From assembly GCA_001949185.1 (NCBI GenBank), contig BDGG01000005.1:2097249-2161248 (forward strand): a DNA stretch of 64,000 nucleotides. The letters are read 5' to 3'. Shown here in pieces: positions 339 through 41,922 of the stretch; the stretch's first letter is position 1; each line of letters begins with the position of its first letter. Below the pieces are notes generated by a model. That model did no database searches. It saw nothing but the letters and a program-made list of their open reading frames with translations, and was not told the DNA's origin. The position numbers and the translations under genes were made by a program. The DNA comes from Ramazzottius varieornatus. Taxonomy: Eukaryota; Animalia; Tardigrada.

Positions 339-904
339 TTCCTCAACGGTCCAAAACGATCAAGCTGTTACCCGTCAATACCGCAGTGCAAAATTAGAAC
401 AAGTTAGGAAGCAGGATGTTTGCTCATCAGGACCGACTGTTTCCATAGCTCTTCGCTCAATTCGGCCAAAATACCCACAAAACAAGCAAGCTGCTAAAGA
501 CGACAGCGACCTCCGCATCAAGAGCCTCCGCTCGGTAGGATTTGTAGTGATGTCATGCTGGTACCCCAACCTGCCGCCCATGCACTGACACCAGTACTGC
601 CAAGAATCGGTATTCGGTGAATTAGTCAATTTTCCCACCCTTCCTGTAAAGCAAGAAGAACGCCTCTGTCGTATTGAATAGGCAAAATACACATGTTGTG
701 ACACCTTTGATAGCGATCGACAGATGCAAAGTCCAACGAACGTATGCGGATGCACTGAAACTCAGAAAAGCAGCAAAAGGTTTCCTGGTGTTACCCTATC
801 TGTTTCCAAATCCCCATAATTTCAACATCATTGTTATTATCAAAGATATATTCGCCTTGGACGCTGTTTACAAACGTCATTTGTACCTTGTGCAATCTGT
901 CAAA

Positions 905-2027
905 ATGAGGACGTACCTTTTGCTCGTTGCTCTAGCGGTGGCGGTTAGTTGGGTGTCTTTCATGAGTCTGTACTGTACCTAGTAAAACTATGATGTTGGG
1001 CTTTGTAGGCAGGAGCAGCTCGGGAACGTAGTTGGGAGCGAACCCGCGGAAGTCAAGACGATGATTTCGGCGTTTCCGACCGTCAGCGTTCAAGGCTCAA
1101 TCCTCTTACGGCAAGTGAAAACCCATCAACCAACTATATACGGATAAAAACAGAAATCTTACGATTAAACAATGATGGAGGAATAAAAAGCAACGGAGCC
1201 AGCTGCGATGTGTTCGGCACGTGCGACCCGGTAAGGGGCTCGACCTATTCTAATTCAACTGAATGTTCACGTTTACCTTCTGGCAAAATCCTGTCTACAG
1301 GTCTGCTACGCGAACTTGGACACGTAAGCTACTCGGCGAAGAGACTTGTAACTGAGACTCAGGCATCCAAACACAGCAAGAACGTTCCAAGTGGCGCACG
1401 TTTACGGTCATTAACACTGGAAACGTGCGCCACTGAAACAATAAACTGTTGAGTTTGATTGTCTTGCTCCGGGCACGCAGTTGTTTTTGGAATGCCACAG
1501 TTGGTGGGTTCTTCCAGAGAGCGTCCAAATGCTGACTGGCCGGGTGCGAAGCCAGACACGACATGGATGACCGTCTTCGGAGTCGATGATAACAACAGCC
1601 CTATAATCAACGTCGCCATACACAAAGACATCTGCGGAGCTGCGTATCACGTGAGAAAATTCACCTTCCTCACCGCGAGCTACATGGTAGGAAGTCCTGT
1701 CGTTGTAGGAAGCTAATCTTCGGGTCAAGTGTATGGACAGGGATCCCGCCACGAAAGATGACCTGATTAACGAGTTCGACTGCCCCATCAACAGACTTCC
1801 ATCGAGGACTGAAAGCGCCAAAGACTGGTCGCCCATCACGAACTGTCTTCCCAGACATGTACCGGACAAAATGGGGTATGAACGTTGAAACTATCTTAAG
1901 GCTTGTACTTACTTGTCGTGGCATCTTTCGCGGCCCTTATTTATGATTGTTGCTTCTTAGTCTGACTTTCCGCTACCAAGTCTACCGGATCCCGAAGAGC
2001 GAATGTAATGCCACCCTGGCTCGCTGA
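905..2027 (+). CDS. Secreted stand-alone C2/MNNL-like domain protein, paralog 1 (6 exons)
   Basis: Signal peptide MRTYLLLVALAVA/AGA. GT-AG splicing gives ...IRIKTEILRLNNDGGIKSNGASCDVFGTCDP-VCYANLDT-ERPNADWPG...KDICGAAYH-EANLRVKCMDRDPATKDDLINEFDCPINR...WSPITNCLP...-LTFRYQVYRIPKSECNATLAR*. Aligns by eye with four paralogs in this window. Confidence 0.8.
1368..1457. mobile_element. Hairpin MITE family H, copy 1 (intron of C2 paralog 1)
   Basis: ccaagtggcgcacgttt-loop-aaacgtgcgccact core. Confidence 0.75.
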
Positions 2028-2211
2028 ACGATTGCCTGTCAAGAAAATAGCGCTTGCCGATAATGTTCACATTTCCAGAACTTCGTTACTATTCTGTAAT
2101 ATCTGTACGGTTCGCATGTACCCTGTGTGGGATGGACAGTGTTTCGCCGTTGTATAGTCCTGCCGTTGTATAGTCCAGCCCTGTAAGGAAAAAACGACCG
2201 ACAACCCCGGT

Positions 2212-2403
2212 CAGTACACGCACGACGGGAAATCATGGGGCCAGTGAAAATTATGGTACAGGCCTTTTCGCTACGGCGGTACGGATGCACGTACGTACGC
2301 GACTGATTCACAGCAATACACTTTTGAACATTTTCCTACGTTTGAATTTCAGTTTTGTCGTCTTTTCCGCCTGGCCCCATAATTTCCCGTCGTGCGTGTA
2401 CTG
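2212..2403. mobile_element. MITE with ~33-bp TIRs (CAGTAC... ends, Tc1/mariner-like)
   Basis: cagtacacgcacgacgggaaatcatggggccag at 2212 and its near-perfect inverse ctggccccataatttcccgtcgtgcgtgtactg ending at 2403. TA follows the right end only. Confidence 0.7.
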
Positions 2404-2869
2404 TAGTTTCAGTGTCACACACTCGACAGACTTCCTTGTACAGTACCATAAGCTACGGTGGACGAGCGAATCACCGGGCAAATCCACCGAGCTTATTCGT
2501 TTGAGTAATTCTGTATGAAAACATCACGTACCAGCATCCGTTTGCTGGGAGATGTTCGAGATAGGGAAGGACCTTCGACCTTCCCAGGAACCGTAAACAC
2601 ATGTGCGCGTGGCGAACACATTCTGCATTGACAGTTCATCTCCTTACAACAAATACAACCTGTTGATCCCTAAAATACATTGATCAGCGCAATTTCTTCT
2701 GATAAGGTTATCAACTTCACTGAAGCTGTGAGATCTCCTTCGCAAAAAATCTTCGAGACAAGTGGAGAAATACGGACCATCTTCAGTGAATTCCACCTGT
2801 TGCCCCGCCCATGACGTCAACCGGAAGTAGCGTTAAACTTGAGTAATCAACCAGTCCTCCGGTTATGCA

Positions 2870-4033
2870 ATGTTTTTCCAAATTTTCCTCCCATCTGCCA
2901 TTCTTCTCTGGATGTCGGACGTAGACCACTGCTCCGCACTTCAAGTAGGTAAGGATGAACGTGAAAGTATGTAACGCTTCTAAAGAATTACCGTACTGTA
3001 GGTGTTGAGCTCACCTGACTGTTGCAATGCTGGTCGTACTTGATATTCCAGGGTAAAAAATCCAGCGGTTCGTCCACTCCTGTTCCGGTCCAGTCAGTAC
3101 AATACATCATCCAAGGAGTAAACGAGCATACGGTCTCGAATAAGTCTGCAGGAACCAACGACGGAGATGGTCTTCTTGACATATGGGACAAAGATACTCG
3201 CTCGTCGATTCGTGTGGAGGCCGAGATAGTCCAGCTCACGAACGATGAGGGGATTCTGGCTGACGGCTCCAGATGTGATATCTTCCGCAACCCGTGTGAT
3301 CCAGCTTGTTACGCGGACTTTGATCTGTAAGAATTAACGTCAAGGTTCTTTCGAATCCTCTCCGAATCTTTTGCGAAATAATTTTGTCCCTTCGGTGCAC
3401 CATGCATCGTTCGTGTGGCGATTTCATGGCAAGCCATTCGGCCTGGTTTTGAGCGCCAGTCTATTGTGAGTGCCGCCCTTACTTTATTCTTCCTGTATTC
3501 AAGATTGGCTCCAACCGCGGCGTTCCCTGGAGGAACTACCAAGTTCACGAAGCTCAAACAGCTGAATGACTACAACTCTCCGGTATTAGATGCCACAATT
3601 GACCGAACTTTCTGCTCGAAATTATACAAGGTATTTGAGGGAGGTGGCTGTTTAAGTCTTGGGCAGTGAGCCACACCATCGGTAAACTCGCGCGTTTTTT
3701 AGGAAGCTAGTTTAAGAGTATACTGTGAGGACGTGGATGCAGCTTCTGACGTGGACCTCATTAACCGATGGAACTGTCCAATCAACCGTCCACTGAAAAG
3801 TAATGAAAAGTTCGCCGAATGGACACAGCCTGCGGACTGTCTTCCGCAGTTTCAAGCAGGGAGAATGAGGTGAGTTTTAAAGTCGTTGTGTCTGTCAACA
3901 TTTCCATCCAAACTGCAATTGCAGCCCAAAGACCTTATTGGACTTCTTCTACAGGTTGACATACAGATACAAGATCTATTATACCAGAGATCGAGAAGTC
4001 AACTGCAGAGCAACCGCTCGGGACGAGGTTTGA
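2870..4033 (+). CDS. Secreted stand-alone C2/MNNL-like domain protein, paralog 2 (5 exons)
   Basis: Signal-like MFFQIFLPSAILLWMSDVDHCSA, then ...IRVEAEIVQLTNDEGILADGSRCDIFRNPCDPACYADFDL-LAPTAAFPG...RTFCSKLYK-EASLRVYCEDVDAASDVDLINRWNCPINR...WTQPADCLP...-LTYRYKIYYTRDREVNC...*. Introns in the domain fall at positions shared with paralogs 1 and 3. Confidence 0.8.
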
Positions 4034-4606
4034 ATGGAGATAAGGCTGTTCTAAGAACTTAAAAGCCATAAAACGATCTTGTATAGAGTTTAATGCTCGG
4101 TGGTGGTTTTGGTGATGACTTCCCGATCAAGTTTCCCGTCCGCTGAAAATTTTTCAGAGGGACGTGCCATTAGACGTTTGAGTAGCATTGTGAAAAACAG
4201 TACCATCGTCAAGCTGTGTTGCCGATTCAGCAAGTCTGAACCGGAAAAACACAGCCATGCTCAAATAAAGGCTTGTCTTGGCTCAAGATGGATGATCCTT
4301 TCCGCCTGCGGCCCATGGCGGCAATTTTTCCCGCATGTTATCATACTTTCATTGGTCACAAGTGTTGTGAACACCTGACTGAGCCTCAGCAATATCAAGC
4401 CATATCCTTAATTTACGTCACCACTTCATCTCAGCTTCCTCAACAAGAGAAGGTGAATCATTGTACTTTACCAGAAAGAAACCACCGCTGGTCGGCAGTT
4501 TTCTCTTTGCACTGCTGCCGTTATAAAGAAAACAACAGCAGCTGCTCTCACCGGCAGTTGATGCTTCTTCGAGTCTTTTTTCATCTACACTAAATCGCAA
4601 ATCAAC

Positions 4607-5980
4607 ATGCATTCGATAGCTGTGTTTCCCATTCTTTTGGTAAGTGTCTTATCGGAGCGCATATCTGTTCTTCCCGATGTCTCATGGCAGCGATCTCCTT
4701 CCGCCTCCAGTGATAGGGAGTCCAGTGGAGTGATTCGTGAAAACAACATCAGACCGTCCTCCATCAGTCGTGACAACTCTTTCAACTCGGGTTCGCGCAG
4801 TTCTTCAAGCTCGAGCTTTGGGTTCGATGAGGACCGCACATCAGGCGGCAGTCGTTTGGGTGGTCCCGGAAGTTCCGGATCCAGAAACAGCCTGAGCGAT
4901 TCCGACAGGTTCCCCATCACCGGCAACCTCCGCCCGGGCTCTTCGATCTCCAGCTCGGGCTCTGCTGACTCAAGGTTTGGGTCCAGTGGATCGTCTGGTT
5001 CTCGACCAGTGTCTGCATTTGGCAGTTCGTCCTTCAATACTCCGGACCCGACGAGAGGACAGTACGTCCGGATTGTAGCGTCGCTGGTGGCATTCGAGAA
5101 CGCAAGAGGCACCACGTCGACGGGAAGCTCGTGTAGCACTTTTGGCCACTGTGATCCTCTCGTCTTCGCTAATCTTGACACGTGAGAAATTATCTATTTG
5201 CAACTAGCCTTCAGCGCAGTTTTGAACCCGAGAAAAAGAAGAAATTTTTGAAGCTCCATTCTTTGTCCGCTGCTAGTTTATCCTGAAGAATTTGGGAGAT
5301 AGCTGCTGATTGAGCTACGCCGATCGAAAGGGGGTGTTGCGATTTACCACCTGTTCACAGTGTGTCTATTCCTCTTTTTCAGAGAACGGCCGAATGCAGC
5401 TTGGCCCGGGTCGCTGGATACCAAGTTTTGGCCTCAAGTCTTTGCAGCCAAGAGCCAAGATTCCTTCAAGATGAATTTGGAAAACATCACAAAGGATGTC
5501 TGCGGACAGAACTACCGAGTAAGCTGAATTGGAACTATTAATATGTTTTTCAGCAAGCGCTTTAGTATGGCTGTCTGACGGGAGCCCGTTTTTGCTGCGA
5601 GCCTCCGGGTGTATTCACAATTGCATCCTGTTTCAGGAAGCTAATCTTCGAGTTCACATCGAAGACAAGAAAGCTCTGCTGTCCAATGCAGTCATCAACG
5701 ACTTTGACTGTGTGATCAACCGTGACCCACAGGAAAGTGCGGCAGCTGCGACGTGGTCCCCCACACGGGAGTGCATACCTCGATTTGCTTCCCCAAAGCA
5801 CACGTAAGCTCAATGTTTATAGAATCTTGACTCTCTTGTAGTGCTAACACGAAGAGTGAATCAAACACTGTGTTTTTGGACAGGCTAACCTACCGATACA
5901 AGGTACACTACGTCCCTCGAATTTCCTGCGGGCTTTCACGCAGCACCACGACGACGACGCCCAGATCTCTTTTCGGCTGA
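4607..5980 (+). CDS. Secreted stand-alone C2/MNNL-like domain protein, paralog 3, with a Ser/Arg/Gly-rich N-terminal linker
   Basis: Hydrophobic N-terminus and a ~120-aa Ser-rich linker, then YVRIVASLVAFENARGTTSTGSSCSTFGHCDPLVFANLDT-ERPNAAWPG...KDVCGQNYR-EANLRVHIEDKKALLSNAVINDFDCVINR...WSPTRECIP-LTYRYKVHYVPRISC...*. Confidence 0.8.
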
Positions 5981-6337
5981 AAAACATGACACTTTTGACC
6001 TTTGTCTAGATGCATCTATTCCAATCATAAAGCTAACTTGGAAGAAACAATGTTTTATGAACGGTGGTAGTGCGATGGATTATTTCTTAAAGCAATAAAG
6101 GTAATATTATTCAGCAGTTCTTGCCATTTGAGTACTCCCGCTAAAATGACTGCGATCCCCGCTGGTGAAGGTCGTTTATCCACCGAACTCTCGATAGTGG
6201 CAGCCCCTGAAAACAACCGTTCATTGCTATTTAGAAGAAGAAGGAGGTGCGAACGTGCGTTCTGGGCCGGGTTTCCAGATTGTTTAAATGGGGAAGCTGA
6301 AACTTTCATCACACTGTACATAAACAAGGCAAAAAGA

Positions 6338-6354
6338 CGCTCCTGGGTGGATTC

Positions 6355-6394
<40 letters not shown>

Positions 6395-6411
6395 AGTTGC
6401 GCCACAAGAGC
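6338..6411 (-). tRNA. tRNA-Asn (GTT)
   Basis: Reverse complement GCTCTTGTGGCGCAACTGGTTAGCGCGTTCGGCTGTTAACCGAAAGGTTGGTGGTTCGAATCCACCCAGGAGCG folds as a cloverleaf with A and B boxes. An oligo-T terminator lies at 6331-6335. Confidence 0.97.
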
Positions 6412-7362
6412 GAGCTTGCAAATTAATTGATGTGATCGCTATGTGTTGAACTCATCAACCGCGATCAGTCATCTCCACGCACCTGGGACTTCCGACAAGC
6501 GCCAAATTTCAAACTCTCCCTGCGCGTACAGATACTTGGCAGCCTGTTGAAATCAACGGAAAGTCTCACTCGAATACGCAGTTTACGGCTGGTTACCGAA
6601 TGCCCCTAATTCGACCAGCTATATTAAATAGCCATTATGATCGATCGGAGTCACGCACAGCCCTACCTAAAGCAAAGTGGTCGCCTGCAAAAAGCGCCAT
6701 TTTGTTCCCTGCATAGCGCGATTCATTGGGCTCTTTTGACTGCCATGCATGCACTGGACTCACAGTAAACACCAAACAGTCCCGCGGAAAGATCGATAAG
6801 AGGAATGGGAGCTGCTCTCCGGCCTCTCTAGCAATCTCTGTACATCCACTCACTGTACCCGGAGGTCCTTCTGTCTTCCTGGTGGCGCATGCACTGGGGA
6901 AGATACCACCAACAGGATCGACTGTCCCCACATCTTATTCGTATCGATCGTATTAGCGCTTGTTTGCTCTCCAGGACTTGTCGTTTCTAGGCCGGCCGAG
7001 GCTCAACGGAAGAAGATCCAACCACTGGAACACGTGCAAAGAGGGTAAGCATATATCATTCGCATCACACTCCTACCGCACAGTGCGACTGGACTGTCAA
7101 ACGACGCAGCCTCATCCCTTTTAATCTGGTCCTAACGGCAAATTGCCCAGATCCCCTCGGAATATCCTTGGCGTCTTCGAACTTCCAATCTGGTTTGTTC
7201 GTCCTCTGGTTAGAAAACAGGTACGCGGAGCTCTTTGGAAACCTTCTCGAAGTGTGAAGCAGATTTCGTCTGTTGAAGAACCTTAGTCTTGCTTGGGAAT
7301 ACTGTTCGTGGAATATTCTCAATCGCCGAGTATTTGCAGGCTGTTTCAGCAACTCCGAAAAC

Positions 7363-39067: not shown

Positions 39068-40294
39068 ATGGACAGCGTTCTCAAGTTCGCTCTTCTCACG
39101 GTACGTACGGCTCTCCAGATTCCTTGTGTGGCTCCGAGAGATCGTTTAAAGAATATTATTTAATTTAGTATACACGAGCTCATCTAAAAAGGAGGATGTT
39201 TAACTGTTTTTGTTTCAGATTATTTTTGACAGCGCTCGCGCCCAGCTGATCCCCTTCAGTGTCTTCTCTACGAACAACAACAACCAAAGCTCTCCTCTCC
39301 AAATCGAGGTGCTGCTGCTTAGGTTCGACAACCCCAATGGGATAGTCTATTCAGGAAAGAAATGCGACTTTTTCGCTTGGGGATGCGACATCAGCGCCTT
39401 CGGATACATCGACGTGTAAGACGCTTAAACTTGAACTTAATCTACGGCGTGCACTATACGTAATCCGCTTGAGAGGTTGCACGTAAAGTACACCTTGTAT
39501 TTGTCTTATTTGTCTTACAGTACACGTCCTTACGATGAATGGCCCGGTGAGCGGGACATGCGGGGATCGGATCACTTTTGGTACAAGTCTGAAGAGAGCT
39601 CTCCACGATTCAACAGAATGTTCACCCTAACGCTTTGCGACCCAAAAGCGTTCTCGGTACGTTTCTATTCCGGGAAAGAGATTTGCTGTTGTGCTCAGAA
39701 AGTTACCTTTCAGGCTGGAAACCTGCGCGTGCACATGATGGATATTGACGGGTAAGTGTAATATTAGACACAACTTCCGGCATTTTCGATTCTGAGTCAT
39801 GACTTTAAGTTTTCAACACGGGGAACTCGAATGAACTGGTTTTGTTCTGCAGAGGTCTACGCGGCGCCGACGATTTGTAAGTTATCTTTCATAACTTTGG
39901 GGTATTACATTATGCAGACTGACATTTCGGTTGAAGAATTTATGATGTGGTTTATCTTACAGCATCAACAACTTTAACTGCATCTTCTCGAAGCCTGGTG
40001 TGATTTCTTCTAATGAGCAAAGTGCTCCGTGGTCCCGAGAGATGTAAGTGCATCCTACTTCTTCGATCATTACGATGAAATCTTCTCATGAACTTCAAAG
40101 GTGTTATCCGCAGGACTTGCGATGCCATGTACCTTCAGCCTATGATGAGGTTAGTCAGTTGGTAATGAAGAGCTGGTGGCACTCTAGAATCAGGCATACG
40201 GGAAATACCGTCATCAAGTCTGTGTTGTTTCTTTTCTAGCATGTACTTCAAGTACAGGATGTTCTACCAGCCTAACTCGTGGGCCTGCAAGTAA
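39068..40294 (+). CDS. Secreted stand-alone C2/MNNL-like domain protein, paralog 4 (8 short exons)
   Basis: MDSVLKFALLT-IIFDSARA signal, then LQIEVLLLRFDNPNGIVYSGKKCDFFAWGCDISAFGYIDV-TRPYDEWPG...TLCDPKAFS-AGNLRVHMMDIDG-GLRGADDL-INNFNC...WSREM-TCDA...-MYFKYRMFYQPNSWACK*. Confidence 0.78.
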
Positions 40295-40742
40295 TCAGGG
40301 CTTCCACTGTTTACAGTATCTATGTTTTGAACTTCATAGTTTGAGAGGCTCAGGTACGATTTTTGCAGTTCTTTTGCCGGTTTTTGTGGTGCACATTGGT
40401 ATAGTATAGGCTTGTCTTTTTCTTTTCTGCCGGGAAGAGCCCGCTCGAATATCTTCTTCCAGCATTTTGCGTCTGTTTTTCTCTGCTGATTACGTGTGAT
40501 CTCTGTGTGCTACGTAAATCAAAACAGCTTGTACAGGACTGCGTGATGTCGGGGCGCGATGCGAAGGACAAAGGTTAAAACGACGCTTGGCACGTGTGCT
40601 GGTTTCTCAGCCGAAAACACTTTCAGAAGTGTGAATACACCCGAATCAACACTGGTTAATTCTGATGAAAAGTACAAGCATCAAATGATTAGGCAAGTGA
40701 TTTCTCCGAGCGCCGTATTTTCAACTCCCAAGGCGCACAAAG

Positions 40743-41922
40743 ATGTTGCATTGTGATCTTGTGAGGCTCCTTATGGCCCTGTCGACAGCCGTATGCTTAT
40801 ACGCCCAGGAAAACCCAAACCACACCTCCAATCTGACTGAACGGTATCGAGTGGAAGTTGAACTGCTTCGGCTGGAGAATCCCAACGGTAAGCTTTTTTT
40901 TAATCGAAGACCTTGAGACCCATCGACGGAGGTCTCTTGTCGTAACTGTTCGCCATGCTCCACAGGTATCAGTCTAGATGGACAGGCTTGCGATCCATTG
41001 AGCCTTGGATGCAACACGAAAATCTCGGCTTATCTGGATACGTAAGTAACAGGAAGTACCGAAAGACTTATTAGACCTTCTCGAAGACTTGGCAAAGAGA
41101 AGCGTCCGCAAACGATTCGGAATCAAGCCCAGGATAAAAAGGCATTCGAGCGATGTGCGCTTGTCAACCTACTGGCTGCGTATGCTTTTTAGGGATCTGT
41201 TTTCACCATGGCCCGGAAGTCGCGAAATAACGCAAGAAGATCTGTAAGACATATTAAACGTCTGCTTCCTATATTCTTGCGTCTGCTTACCGACAGTAGC
41301 ATGCACTTCCGGGTTGTGGAACTTCAACTTACCTCCTTACTTGTAGGATTTTCGAGGCTGCCGAGCCTTCCCCCACCTCCATGGACGTTAATACAAAAAT
41401 CGTCAACCAGGTCTGCGCTCCTTCCTTCCAGGTACTATCGGTTACTTTGAAGGTTGAACCAACCAAACGAGTGAAAACAGGCTTTGAATGGACACGAATC
41501 CTGGTCCTCCTTCTGACACACAGGGTTTCAACCTGCGCGTGGAAGTGAAAGACGAAGACAAGTTAGTGGTCAGTAAAGACGCCCGCTGTTTCAAGAGTTT
41601 TATCTGGCGGTGTTGGAAACAAACCATTTTCCGGCAGCTTTTCAGAGGACAAGATGACATAATTTCCGCCTTTAACTGTCTGTACAACGAACCACCTGCC
41701 GACAGCGAAGAACTCTCACAGTGGTCCAACAGCACTTTCTGCCAGCAAGTCACCATTCAGCCGAGCATTTCGTGAGTACCTCGACTCCCCACCAAACCTA
41801 GCTTGTGTACGATGTAGACCGCCAAAGTCGTTACTTTCAGACTGTCATTTCGAGCTCGAGCATTCCGCGAAGCAGGAGACACGTCGTGCGCACTCGAAGA
41901 AGCGAACCCTACAACGAGCTGA
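40743..41922 (+). CDS. Secreted stand-alone C2/MNNL-like domain protein, paralog 5 (7 exons)
   Basis: MLHCDLVRLLMALSTAVCLYA signal, then YRVEVELLRLENPNG-ISLDGQACDPLSLGCNTKISAYLDT-DLFSPWPG...VCAPSFQ-GFNLRVEVKDEDK-GQDDIISAFNC...WSNSTFC...-LSFRARAFREAGDTSC...*. Confidence 0.78.

What the first reader, a model, noticed from the sequence alone, without database searches (positions are those of the whole stretch)
905..5980. Family of secreted solo C2/MNNL-like proteins resembling the Notch-ligand N-terminal domain without DSL, EGF or TM regions (cluster 1, three tandem genes)
Seen in sequence: three tandem same-strand genes, plus two more at 39-42 kb. Each encodes a signal peptide and one ~150-aa domain with the pattern hydrophobic strand-N-x2-G-x4-G-x2-C-x5-6-C ... 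W/F-P-G ... C ... N/S-L-R-V-x3-D ... I-x2-F/W-x-C ... W-x5-6-C ... L/M-x-F/Y-R/K-x ... C, then a stop. Established knowledge: the N-terminal C2 (MNNL) domain of Delta/Jagged starts F-E-L-x-x-x-x-x-x-N-x-x-G-x4-G-x-C-C, ends L-x-Y-x-x-R-x-x-C at the DSL junction, and binds phospholipids. Inference: these are free, secreted, disulfide-bonded C2 modules from an expanded lineage-specific family, acting for example as extracellular membrane- or lipid-binding proteins (stress protection, defence) or as Notch-pathway decoys. The ORF track misses them because the exons are short.
Basis: partly seen in the sequence, partly recalled or inferred. Interest (0 to 1): 0.85.

Follow-up and report, generated by a model that had tools for sequence, protein, structure and literature searches.

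The report
Known tardigrade secreted C2 (AMNP/TC2P) genes
The three tandem genes are real, expressed members of a tardigrade-only family of secreted, disulfide-locked, metal-binding C2 domains (AMNP/TC2P) that already has crystal structures and a proposed stress-protection role, so the finding is correct but not new; only its suggested kinship with the Notch-ligand C2 domain is unreported.

Summary
Window 905-5980 (+) holds three spliced genes of Ramazzottius varieornatus, RvY_10575, RvY_10576 and RvY_10577. Transcript contigs from four studies show all 12 introns, and each transcript ends just after its stop codon, so there are no DSL, EGF or TM exons.

The family has been published: 35 copies in this genome, tandem arrays, Golgi localisation, Mn2+/Zn2+/Ca2+ binding, and Mn-dependent peroxidase activity.

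The MNNL resemblance is partly supported:
- Pfam MNNL does not match.
- Profile-profile alignment links strand 1 and loop 1 to MNNL (P ~1e-5; 0 of 150 shuffles reach that score).

Genes 1 and 2 keep all five metal-binding aspartates. Gene 3 has lost three.

The parts
905..2027 (+). Gene 1 = RvY_10575 (GAU99602.1), 216 aa. Exons 905-943, 1009-1230, 1301-1323, 1518-1650, 1709-1875, 1961-2027. Signal peptide, ~35-aa low-confidence linker, C2 domain at residues ~54-211. All five Asp metal ligands are kept (D80, D86, D119, D149, D151).
   Evidence: Model. Five introns seen in contigs of 4 runs. Identical to P0008. AF2 model pLDDT 70-92 over the domain. Ligand mapping.
2870..4033 (+). Gene 2 = RvY_10576 (GAU99603.1), 240 aa. 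Exons 2870-2944, 3052-3326, 3504-3630, 3703-3869, 3955-4033. All five Asp ligands are kept (D101, D108, D139, D169, D171). Transcript contigs span 2564-4275.
4607..5980 (+). Gene 3 = RvY_10577, 324 aa. Exons 4607-5181, 5383-5518, 5637-5803, 5884-5980. It has a long Ser/Gly-rich linker (residues ~20-150) before the C2 domain. Three of the five ligand positions are changed (S177, S216, K249). The contig 5' end at 4553 carries template-switch-oligo-like loose letters. The candidate 51-nt intron at 4640-4690 is not spliced in the contigs.
39198..40255 (+). Gene 4, a family member matching P0064 (199 aa). The exons were not modelled here, so the span is approximate and taken from exon hits.
40743..41772 (+). 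Gene 5, a family member matching P0069 (205 aa). The exons were not modelled here, so the span is approximate.

Best explanation
The three genes are expressed paralogues of the tardigrade-specific AMNP/TC2P family (orthogroup OG0000231, the 'g12777 family').

Architecture: each protein enters the secretory pathway through an N-terminal signal peptide. It then carries a disordered linker and one type-II-topology C2 beta-sandwich. By homology to g12777, three conserved disulfides lock the domain. In g1 numbering these are C79-C85 on metal-binding loop 1, C134-C210 and C164-C185.

Metal site: a cluster of aspartates on the loops at one tip of the sandwich binds a divalent cation. The cluster includes the 'CD...CD' motif, one Asp after strand 3, and the D-x-D at the end of the L-R-V strand.

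Published family activities are Mn2+/Zn2+/Ca2+ binding, Mn2+-dependent peroxidase activity, Golgi localisation, protection of human cells from H2O2, and possibly Ca2+-dependent membrane docking.

Inference for this locus: g1 and g2 are metal-binding competent. g3 has lost three of the five ligands and carries a long Ser/Gly-rich linker, so it probably works without that metal site.

Shown here: family membership, fold, splicing and expression. Inferred from the family papers: biochemical function.
For: - A profile of 8 family proteins hits PDB 7DBT/7DBU (AMNP/g12777) at E 8.9e-37 and 7DF2 (C2 domain protein of R. varieornatus) at E 3.2e-27.
- The six cysteines map onto the published disulfides C91-C97, C146-C225 and C176-C200 (PMC9145152).
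- Splicing, and transcripts that stop after the coding sequence, are shown.
- The family has 103 representatives at 50% identity. None is longer than 511 aa, and every named one looked up is from a tardigrade.
- About 40 loci in this genome carry family exon hits, against 35 published copies.
- Family biochemistry comes from bioRxiv 10.1101/2020.11.06.370643, PMC9145152 and PMC7784755.
Against: - None of the three proteins has been assayed.
- I could not confirm from the held supplements that these three IDs are in the published list of 35.
- The peroxidase activity of g12777 is modest (1/20 of catalase), and the catalytic mechanism of a C2 fold is not established.
- The TC2P paper proposes Ca2+-dependent membrane docking instead.
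- In a quick tree, g1-g3 sit in a clade (SH-aLRT 99) separate from both crystallised members, so function may differ.
- The signal peptide is read from the sequence and from the family papers. No predictor was run.
Confidence: 0.88

Rival explanations
1. Ca2+-dependent membrane or lipid docking modules of the secretory pathway or extracellular space (the TC2P reading), with no enzymatic role. The aspartate loops bind Ca2+, and hydrophobic loop residues insert into membranes during desiccation stress.
For: - 7DF2 shows three Ca2+ sites and conserved hydrophobic residues on the binding loops.
- The closest structural neighbours are lipid-binding C2 domains: Delta, DLL4, Jagged, E-Syt, ferlins and cPLA2.
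- g1 and g2 keep the full Asp cluster.
Against: - g12777 binds Ca2+ about 70-fold more weakly than Zn2+.
- Lipid binding has not been shown for any family member.
- This reading is not exclusive of the main explanation.
Confidence: 0.35
2. Solo Notch-ligand C2 (MNNL) modules that act on Notch signalling as decoys or modulators.
For: - Local profile-profile match to MNNL strand 1 and loop 1.
- Delta and DLL4 C2 domains are the top non-family structural neighbours.
- An MNNL cluster comes first in the ESM feature search.
Against: - There is no DSL domain, which Notch binding needs according to established knowledge of DSL ligands.
- Pfam MNNL is not matched.
- The family has about 40 copies and is stress-induced and Golgi-localised in the literature, which is unlike a signalling modulator.
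- The genome has only two true MNNL genes.
Confidence: 0.03
3. Chance pattern or decaying pseudogenes rather than functional genes.
For: None found.
Against: - The frames are intact and the splice sites canonical.
- Transcript contigs were found in four studies.
- Each of g1, g2 and g3 has its own orthologues in other tardigrades at 58-73% identity.
Confidence: 0.01

Closest known systems
AMNP / g12777 (RvY_12637), anhydrobiosis-related Mn-dependent peroxidase of R. varieornatus, PDB 7DBT/7DBU (Yoshida et al., BMC Genomics 2022, PMC9145152)
   Different: It falls in a different clade of the family tree. g3 lacks three of the five ligands. No activity or localisation data exist for g1-g3.
TC2P (GAU87506.1), tardigrade C2 domain protein, PDB 7DF2 (Fukuda & Inoue, Protein Sci 2021, PMC7784755)
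   Different: It falls in another clade. Its three Ca2+ sites were seen in the crystal. Whether g1-g3 bind Ca2+ is untested.
Notch-ligand N-terminal C2 domain (Pfam MNNL PF07657; Delta 7ALK, DLL4 5MVX/4XL1, Jagged1 4CC0/5UK5, Serrate 7ALT)
   Same: - It is an extracellular, disulfide-bearing C2 of the same topology.
- Strand 1 and the N-x2-G-x4-G-x(1-2)-C loop are shared (hhalign P ~1e-5).
- The last strand is similar (L-T-[FY]-x-Y-[RKQ]-[VI]; P 0.007).
- In the tardigrade Delta gene a phase-0 intron lies just before the strand that I take, from sequence reading only and not from a structural superposition, to match the L-R-V strand of the TC2P genes, where a phase-0 intron also lies.
   Different: - The Pfam model is not matched.
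- No DSL, EGF or TM part follows.
- The positions of the other cysteines differ.
- The structural score is tied with cytosolic C2 domains.
- Delta exon 2 shows no sequence match.
Classical Ca2+/lipid-binding C2 domains (Pfam PF00168; cPLA2 1RLW, otoferlin 3L9B, E-Syt 7ATP, dysferlin/myoferlin C2A)
   Same: - Sub-threshold Pfam C2 hits in 7 of 70 members, best E 0.0034.
- hhalign against 13 tardigrade C2 domains gives P 1.7e-4 over strands 2-6, including the '(S/C)DP' and 'D-x-D' ligand motifs.
   Different: Classical C2 domains are cytosolic and have no disulfides. Here there is a signal peptide, three disulfides and a longer loop 1.
Perforin C2 domain (4Y1S, 7PAG)
   Different: It is clearly more distant than Notch-ligand or ferlin C2 domains, and it is part of a MACPF protein rather than a solo domain.

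Membership tests
AMNP / TC2P (tardigrade OG0000231, g12777 family) | Significant sequence similarity to the crystallised members g12777 and GAU87506 | tested here: met
   Profile against PDB: 7DBT E 8.9e-37 and 7DF2 E 3.2e-27, both covering the whole domain.
AMNP / TC2P (tardigrade OG0000231, g12777 family) | Eight-stranded C2-like beta-sandwich that superposes on 7DBT and 7DF2 | tested here: met
   [not shown]
AMNP / TC2P (tardigrade OG0000231, g12777 family) | Six conserved cysteines forming three disulfides (g12777 C91-C97, C146-C225, C176-C200) | tested here: met
   All six are present in g1-g5 and in 67-70 of 70 members. The bond pairing is inferred from PMC9145152.
AMNP / TC2P (tardigrade OG0000231, g12777 family) | CD-CD motif and Asp ligands (D92, D98, D131, D161, D163) | tested here: met
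   g1 and g2 have all five. g3 keeps only D183 and D247, with S177, S216 and K249 at the other positions, so g3 does not meet this feature.
AMNP / TC2P (tardigrade OG0000231, g12777 family) | N-terminal signal peptide followed by a disordered region | tested here: inconclusive
   Hydrophobic N-termini are present in all aligned members. pLDDT is below 50 for g1 residues 1-53. No signal-peptide predictor was available.
AMNP / TC2P (tardigrade OG0000231, g12777 family) | Mn2+-dependent peroxidase activity, metal binding, Golgi localisation | not testable with these tools
   Known only for g12777 and six other paralogues.
MNNL (Pfam PF07657, Notch-ligand N-terminal C2) | Match to the Pfam model at or above its 22.5-bit cut-off | tested here: not met
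   No hit on any exon or on full proteins at E <= 10. The six-frame search of the genome finds only two MNNL loci, neither in this window. Two of 70 family members hit weakly, best E 0.035.
MNNL (Pfam PF07657, Notch-ligand N-terminal C2) | Domain followed by DSL, EGF repeats and a TM segment in the same protein | tested here: not met
   Stop codons fall 6-27 residues after the last conserved Cys, and transcript contigs end after them. No family representative is longer than 511 aa.
MNNL (Pfam PF07657, Notch-ligand N-terminal C2) | Closer to Notch-ligand C2 than to other C2 domains | tested here: inconclusive
   - hhalign scores 40.7 against MNNL (N-terminal part only) and 32.7 against classical C2.
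- ESM top named cluster is MNNL: 0.89, 171 shared features.
Classical C2 (Pfam PF00168) | Match to the Pfam model at or above its 22-bit cut-off | tested here: not met
   Best is 18 bits (E 0.0034) for g1. Seven of 70 members match below threshold.
Classical C2 (Pfam PF00168) | C2 beta-sandwich fold with an acidic loop cluster | tested here: met
   [not shown]

The most novel reading that the evidence does not exclude
The tardigrade AMNP/TC2P family may descend from the C2 (MNNL) domain of a Delta/Serrate-type Notch ligand, not from a cytosolic C2 domain. On this reading the 5' exons of a ligand gene were duplicated without DSL, EGF and TM in the tardigrade stem lineage, and the copy then expanded to about 40 secreted genes.

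Neither family paper mentions Notch ligands, and one states that disulfides are unknown in other C2 domains. No paper in the library holds both 'tardigrade' and 'MNNL'.
Probability: 0.4. Interest if true: 0.5.

Novelty: already known. Interest (0 to 1): 0.25.

Why it matters
As a gene-finding result it is ordinary. The three genes are annotated hypothetical proteins of a published family with solved structures and a proposed role in tardigrade stress tolerance.

Two modest points go beyond the literature read here:
- The tandem triplet is old, because each gene has its own orthologues in other eutardigrades. One member (g3) has lost most of the metal site. That makes it a natural control for testing whether metal binding is needed for the family's function.
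- Several weak, co-linear signals point to the Notch-ligand C2 domain as the nearest relative. If confirmed, this would explain where a "tardigrade-unique" stress family came from, and it would give an example of a signalling-ligand domain turned into a stand-alone stress protein.

Tried and rejected
- Pfam on nine single exons gave only one sub-threshold C2 hit (E 0.013) and no MNNL hit. Pfam on full-length P0001 and P0002 gave nothing.
- The Pfam MNNL six-frame scan of the whole genome found only the two true ligand genes.
- hmmsearch of the family profile against PDB at E <= 10 found no Notch ligand and no classical C2. The exhaustive profile search of 1.84 billion representatives returned only short family members.
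- hhalign of the family against single tardigrade Delta and Serrate first exons was not significant (P 0.16 and 0.28). Against Delta exon 2 it was not significant either (P 0.099).
- A full-length MNNL profile could not be built. The length window of the homologue search returned only first-exon fragments, so the C-terminal 40% of MNNL was tested with one sequence only.
- The supplements of both AMNP papers do not hold the IDs RvY_10575, RvY_10576 or RvY_10577. The synteny table seems to be cut off.
- The careful maximum-likelihood tree did not finish in time, so the quick tree is reported.
- The candidate in-frame 51-nt intron in g3 (4640-4690) was rejected, because the contigs are continuous there.
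- Contig depths were not used to rank expression, as the tool advises.
Searches were made exon by exon by reference, then with database proteins that a local script showed to be identical to the spliced models.
Full report
**What is there.** The window comes from a 55.8-Mb, 200-contig assembly. Database matches identify it as Ramazzottius varieornatus.

Reading the three forward frames and joining open segments at GT..AG sites gave three same-strand genes:
- g1: 905-2027, 6 exons, 216 aa.
- g2: 2870-4033, 5 exons, 240 aa.
- g3: 4607-5980, 4 exons, 324 aa.

Exons are 23-575 nt long, which explains why a plain ORF list misses the genes.

**Expression and splicing.** Contigs of four public runs from four studies were laid on 800-6100. 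The contigs hold about half of the stretch's sampled words. The run kind 'RNA' is the tool's guess.
- All 12 predicted introns appear as GT..AG joints in every run.
- Each run has three separate contigs: up to 2223, 2564-4275, and from 4553.
- None of them continues into further coding exons.
- A candidate in-frame intron in g3 (4640-4690) is not used.
- One contig carries, before 4553, loose letters that look like a template-switch oligo. From my own knowledge of SMART-type libraries, this suggests an mRNA 5' end there.

**How the searches were done.** Spliced models were never typed into a tool. Exons were searched by reference. A 191-aa first exon of g3 retrieved the annotated protein RvY_10577 (P0001). 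A local script then showed that the three spliced translations are identical to P0008 (RvY_10575), P0022 (RvY_10576) and P0001. All later searches used those protein ids.

**The family.**
- Close relatives occur in Hypsibius exemplaris, Paramacrobiotus metropolitanus and unnamed assemblies.
- A profile search of 1.84 billion representatives finds 103 proteins, none longer than 511 aa. Every named one that I looked up is from a tardigrade.
- A six-frame scan of this genome gives 105 exon hits. By hand these fall into roughly 38-43 loci, many in tandem arrays.

**Identification.** The family profile hits two solved structures from the same species:
- 7DBT/7DBU, 'AMNP/g12777', at E 8.9e-37.
- 7DF2, 'C2 domain protein', at E 3.2e-27.

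**What is already published.** From Yoshida et al. (bioRxiv 10.1101/2020.11.06.370643; BMC Genomics 2022, PMC9145152):
- The gene family has 35 copies in R. varieornatus and 39 in H. exemplaris.
- It is partly in tandem, conserved across Tardigrada, and falls into four subgroups.
- The crystal structures show Mn2+ or Zn2+ held by D92, D98 and D131, or by D92, D98, D161 and D163.
- The disulfides are C91-C97, C146-C225 and C176-C200.
- The proteins localise to the Golgi in HEK293 cells and protect those cells against H2O2.
- Mn2+-dependent peroxidase activity is about 1/20 that of catalase.

Fukuda and Inoue (PMC7784755) solved another member as 'TC2P'. [quoted passage not shown] They proposed Ca2+-dependent membrane docking and a redox switch. 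Later papers treat AMNP as an established tardigrade family.

**What this locus adds.** Mapping the g12777 residues onto the window proteins gives:

| Gene | Cysteines | Asp ligands kept | Changes |
|---|---|---|---|
| g1 | all six | all five | none |
| g2 | all six | all five | none |
| g3 | all six | D183 and D247 only | S177, S216, K249 |

g3 also has a ~130-aa Ser/Gly-rich linker.

In a quick maximum-likelihood tree (SH-aLRT only; the careful search did not finish):
- g1, g2 and g3 form one clade (support 99), separate from the clades of g12777 and of the TC2P-like protein.
- Each has its own orthologues in other tardigrades, so the triplet predates the divergence of the tardigrade species sampled.
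- g4 (P0064) and g5 (P0069), at 39-42 kb, lie in a divergent clade.

**Is it MNNL-like?**

Negative evidence:
- Pfam MNNL (157 positions) matches no exon and no full protein.
- In the whole genome it finds only two loci, presumably the Delta and Serrate genes.
- Across 70 family members, 7 give sub-threshold hits to generic C2 and 2 to MNNL.
- The family profile against single Delta or Serrate exons is not significant.

Positive evidence:
- In the ESM-feature search the first named cluster is an MNNL cluster, with score 0.89 and 171 of 256 shared features. This is a lead only.
- I aligned 58 MNNL first-exon fragments. Against that alignment the family profile gives hhalign P 1.3e-5 to 3.5e-5 (score about 40) over 45 columns.
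- None of 150 column shuffles reached that score (maximum 27.6), and the reversed alignment scored 11.
- The last strand of tardigrade Delta aligns at the co-linear place with P 0.007.
- In the tardigrade Delta gene a phase-0 intron lies between '...FTWP' and 'ETISVIIEAWH'. All three TC2P genes have a phase-0 intron directly before 'EA(N/S)LRV...'. I take this to be the equivalent strand, from reading the sequences and not from a structural superposition.

Control:
- The family profile also matches 13 classical C2 domains of the same genome, at P 1.7e-4 (score 32.7) over strands 2-6.
- MNNL against classical C2 is not significant.

Reading: the family is a divergent C2 that shows sequence links to both classical C2 and MNNL. 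A specific descent from the Notch-ligand C2 is plausible (I put it at about 0.4) but not shown. The MNNL alignment covered only the N-terminal ~60% of the domain.

**Mechanism.** The most likely reading has three parts:
- The proteins are secretory-pathway, disulfide-stabilised C2 domains.
- Their acidic loop cluster binds Mn2+, Zn2+ or Ca2+.
- They contribute to oxidative or desiccation stress protection, either by the published Mn-dependent peroxidase activity or by Ca2+-dependent membrane binding.

Both roles are inferred from paralogues, not shown for g1-g3. For g3 the loss of three ligands predicts a function that does not depend on the metal. A Notch-decoy role has no support: there is no DSL domain, the family has about 40 stress-linked copies, and published members localise to the Golgi.

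**Verdict.** Interest is low. The only unreported element is the possible origin from the Notch-ligand C2 domain.

Noticed in passing
window 6336-6412 (-): A tRNA-Asn (anticodon GTT) gene lies about 350 nt downstream of g3 on the opposite strand.
   Followed up: no
window 39198-41772 (+): Two more family genes (matching P0064 and P0069) sit 33 kb away. In the quick tree they fall in a divergent clade, separate from g1-g3, so the two clusters are not recent copies of each other. In the database protein matching g5 (P0069), an Asn stands at the second 'CD' position (N65).
   Followed up: partly
window 2214-2404: Contigs of runs X1 and X2 cover part of the g1-g2 spacer, then run on into unlike sequence at both ends (loose ends at 2214, 2248, 2401 and 2404). 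This could be a repeat or another transcript. It is not explained.
   Followed up: no
window 4553 and 4575: A contig of run X5 has template-switch-oligo-like loose letters just before 4553, which suggests the 5' end of the g3 mRNA lies 54 nt upstream of the ATG. Run X10 has one extra T behind 4575 in the 5' UTR.
   Followed up: no
L001 (G000:C11:1217017-1220286) and L002 (G000:C4:3572155-3575496): These are the only two Pfam-MNNL loci of the genome, presumably the Delta-like and Serrate/Jagged-like genes. In L001 the C2 domain is split by a phase-0 intron after '...FTWP' and a phase-1 intron after '...VIMFH', and the DSL motif follows in exon 3.
   Followed up: partly
family-wide (P0110, P0034): A few family representatives are longer: a 501-aa H. 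exemplaris protein that UniRef names 'ZP domain-containing', and a 511-aa RvY_12670 with two matched stretches. So the domain also occurs fused or duplicated.
   Followed up: no
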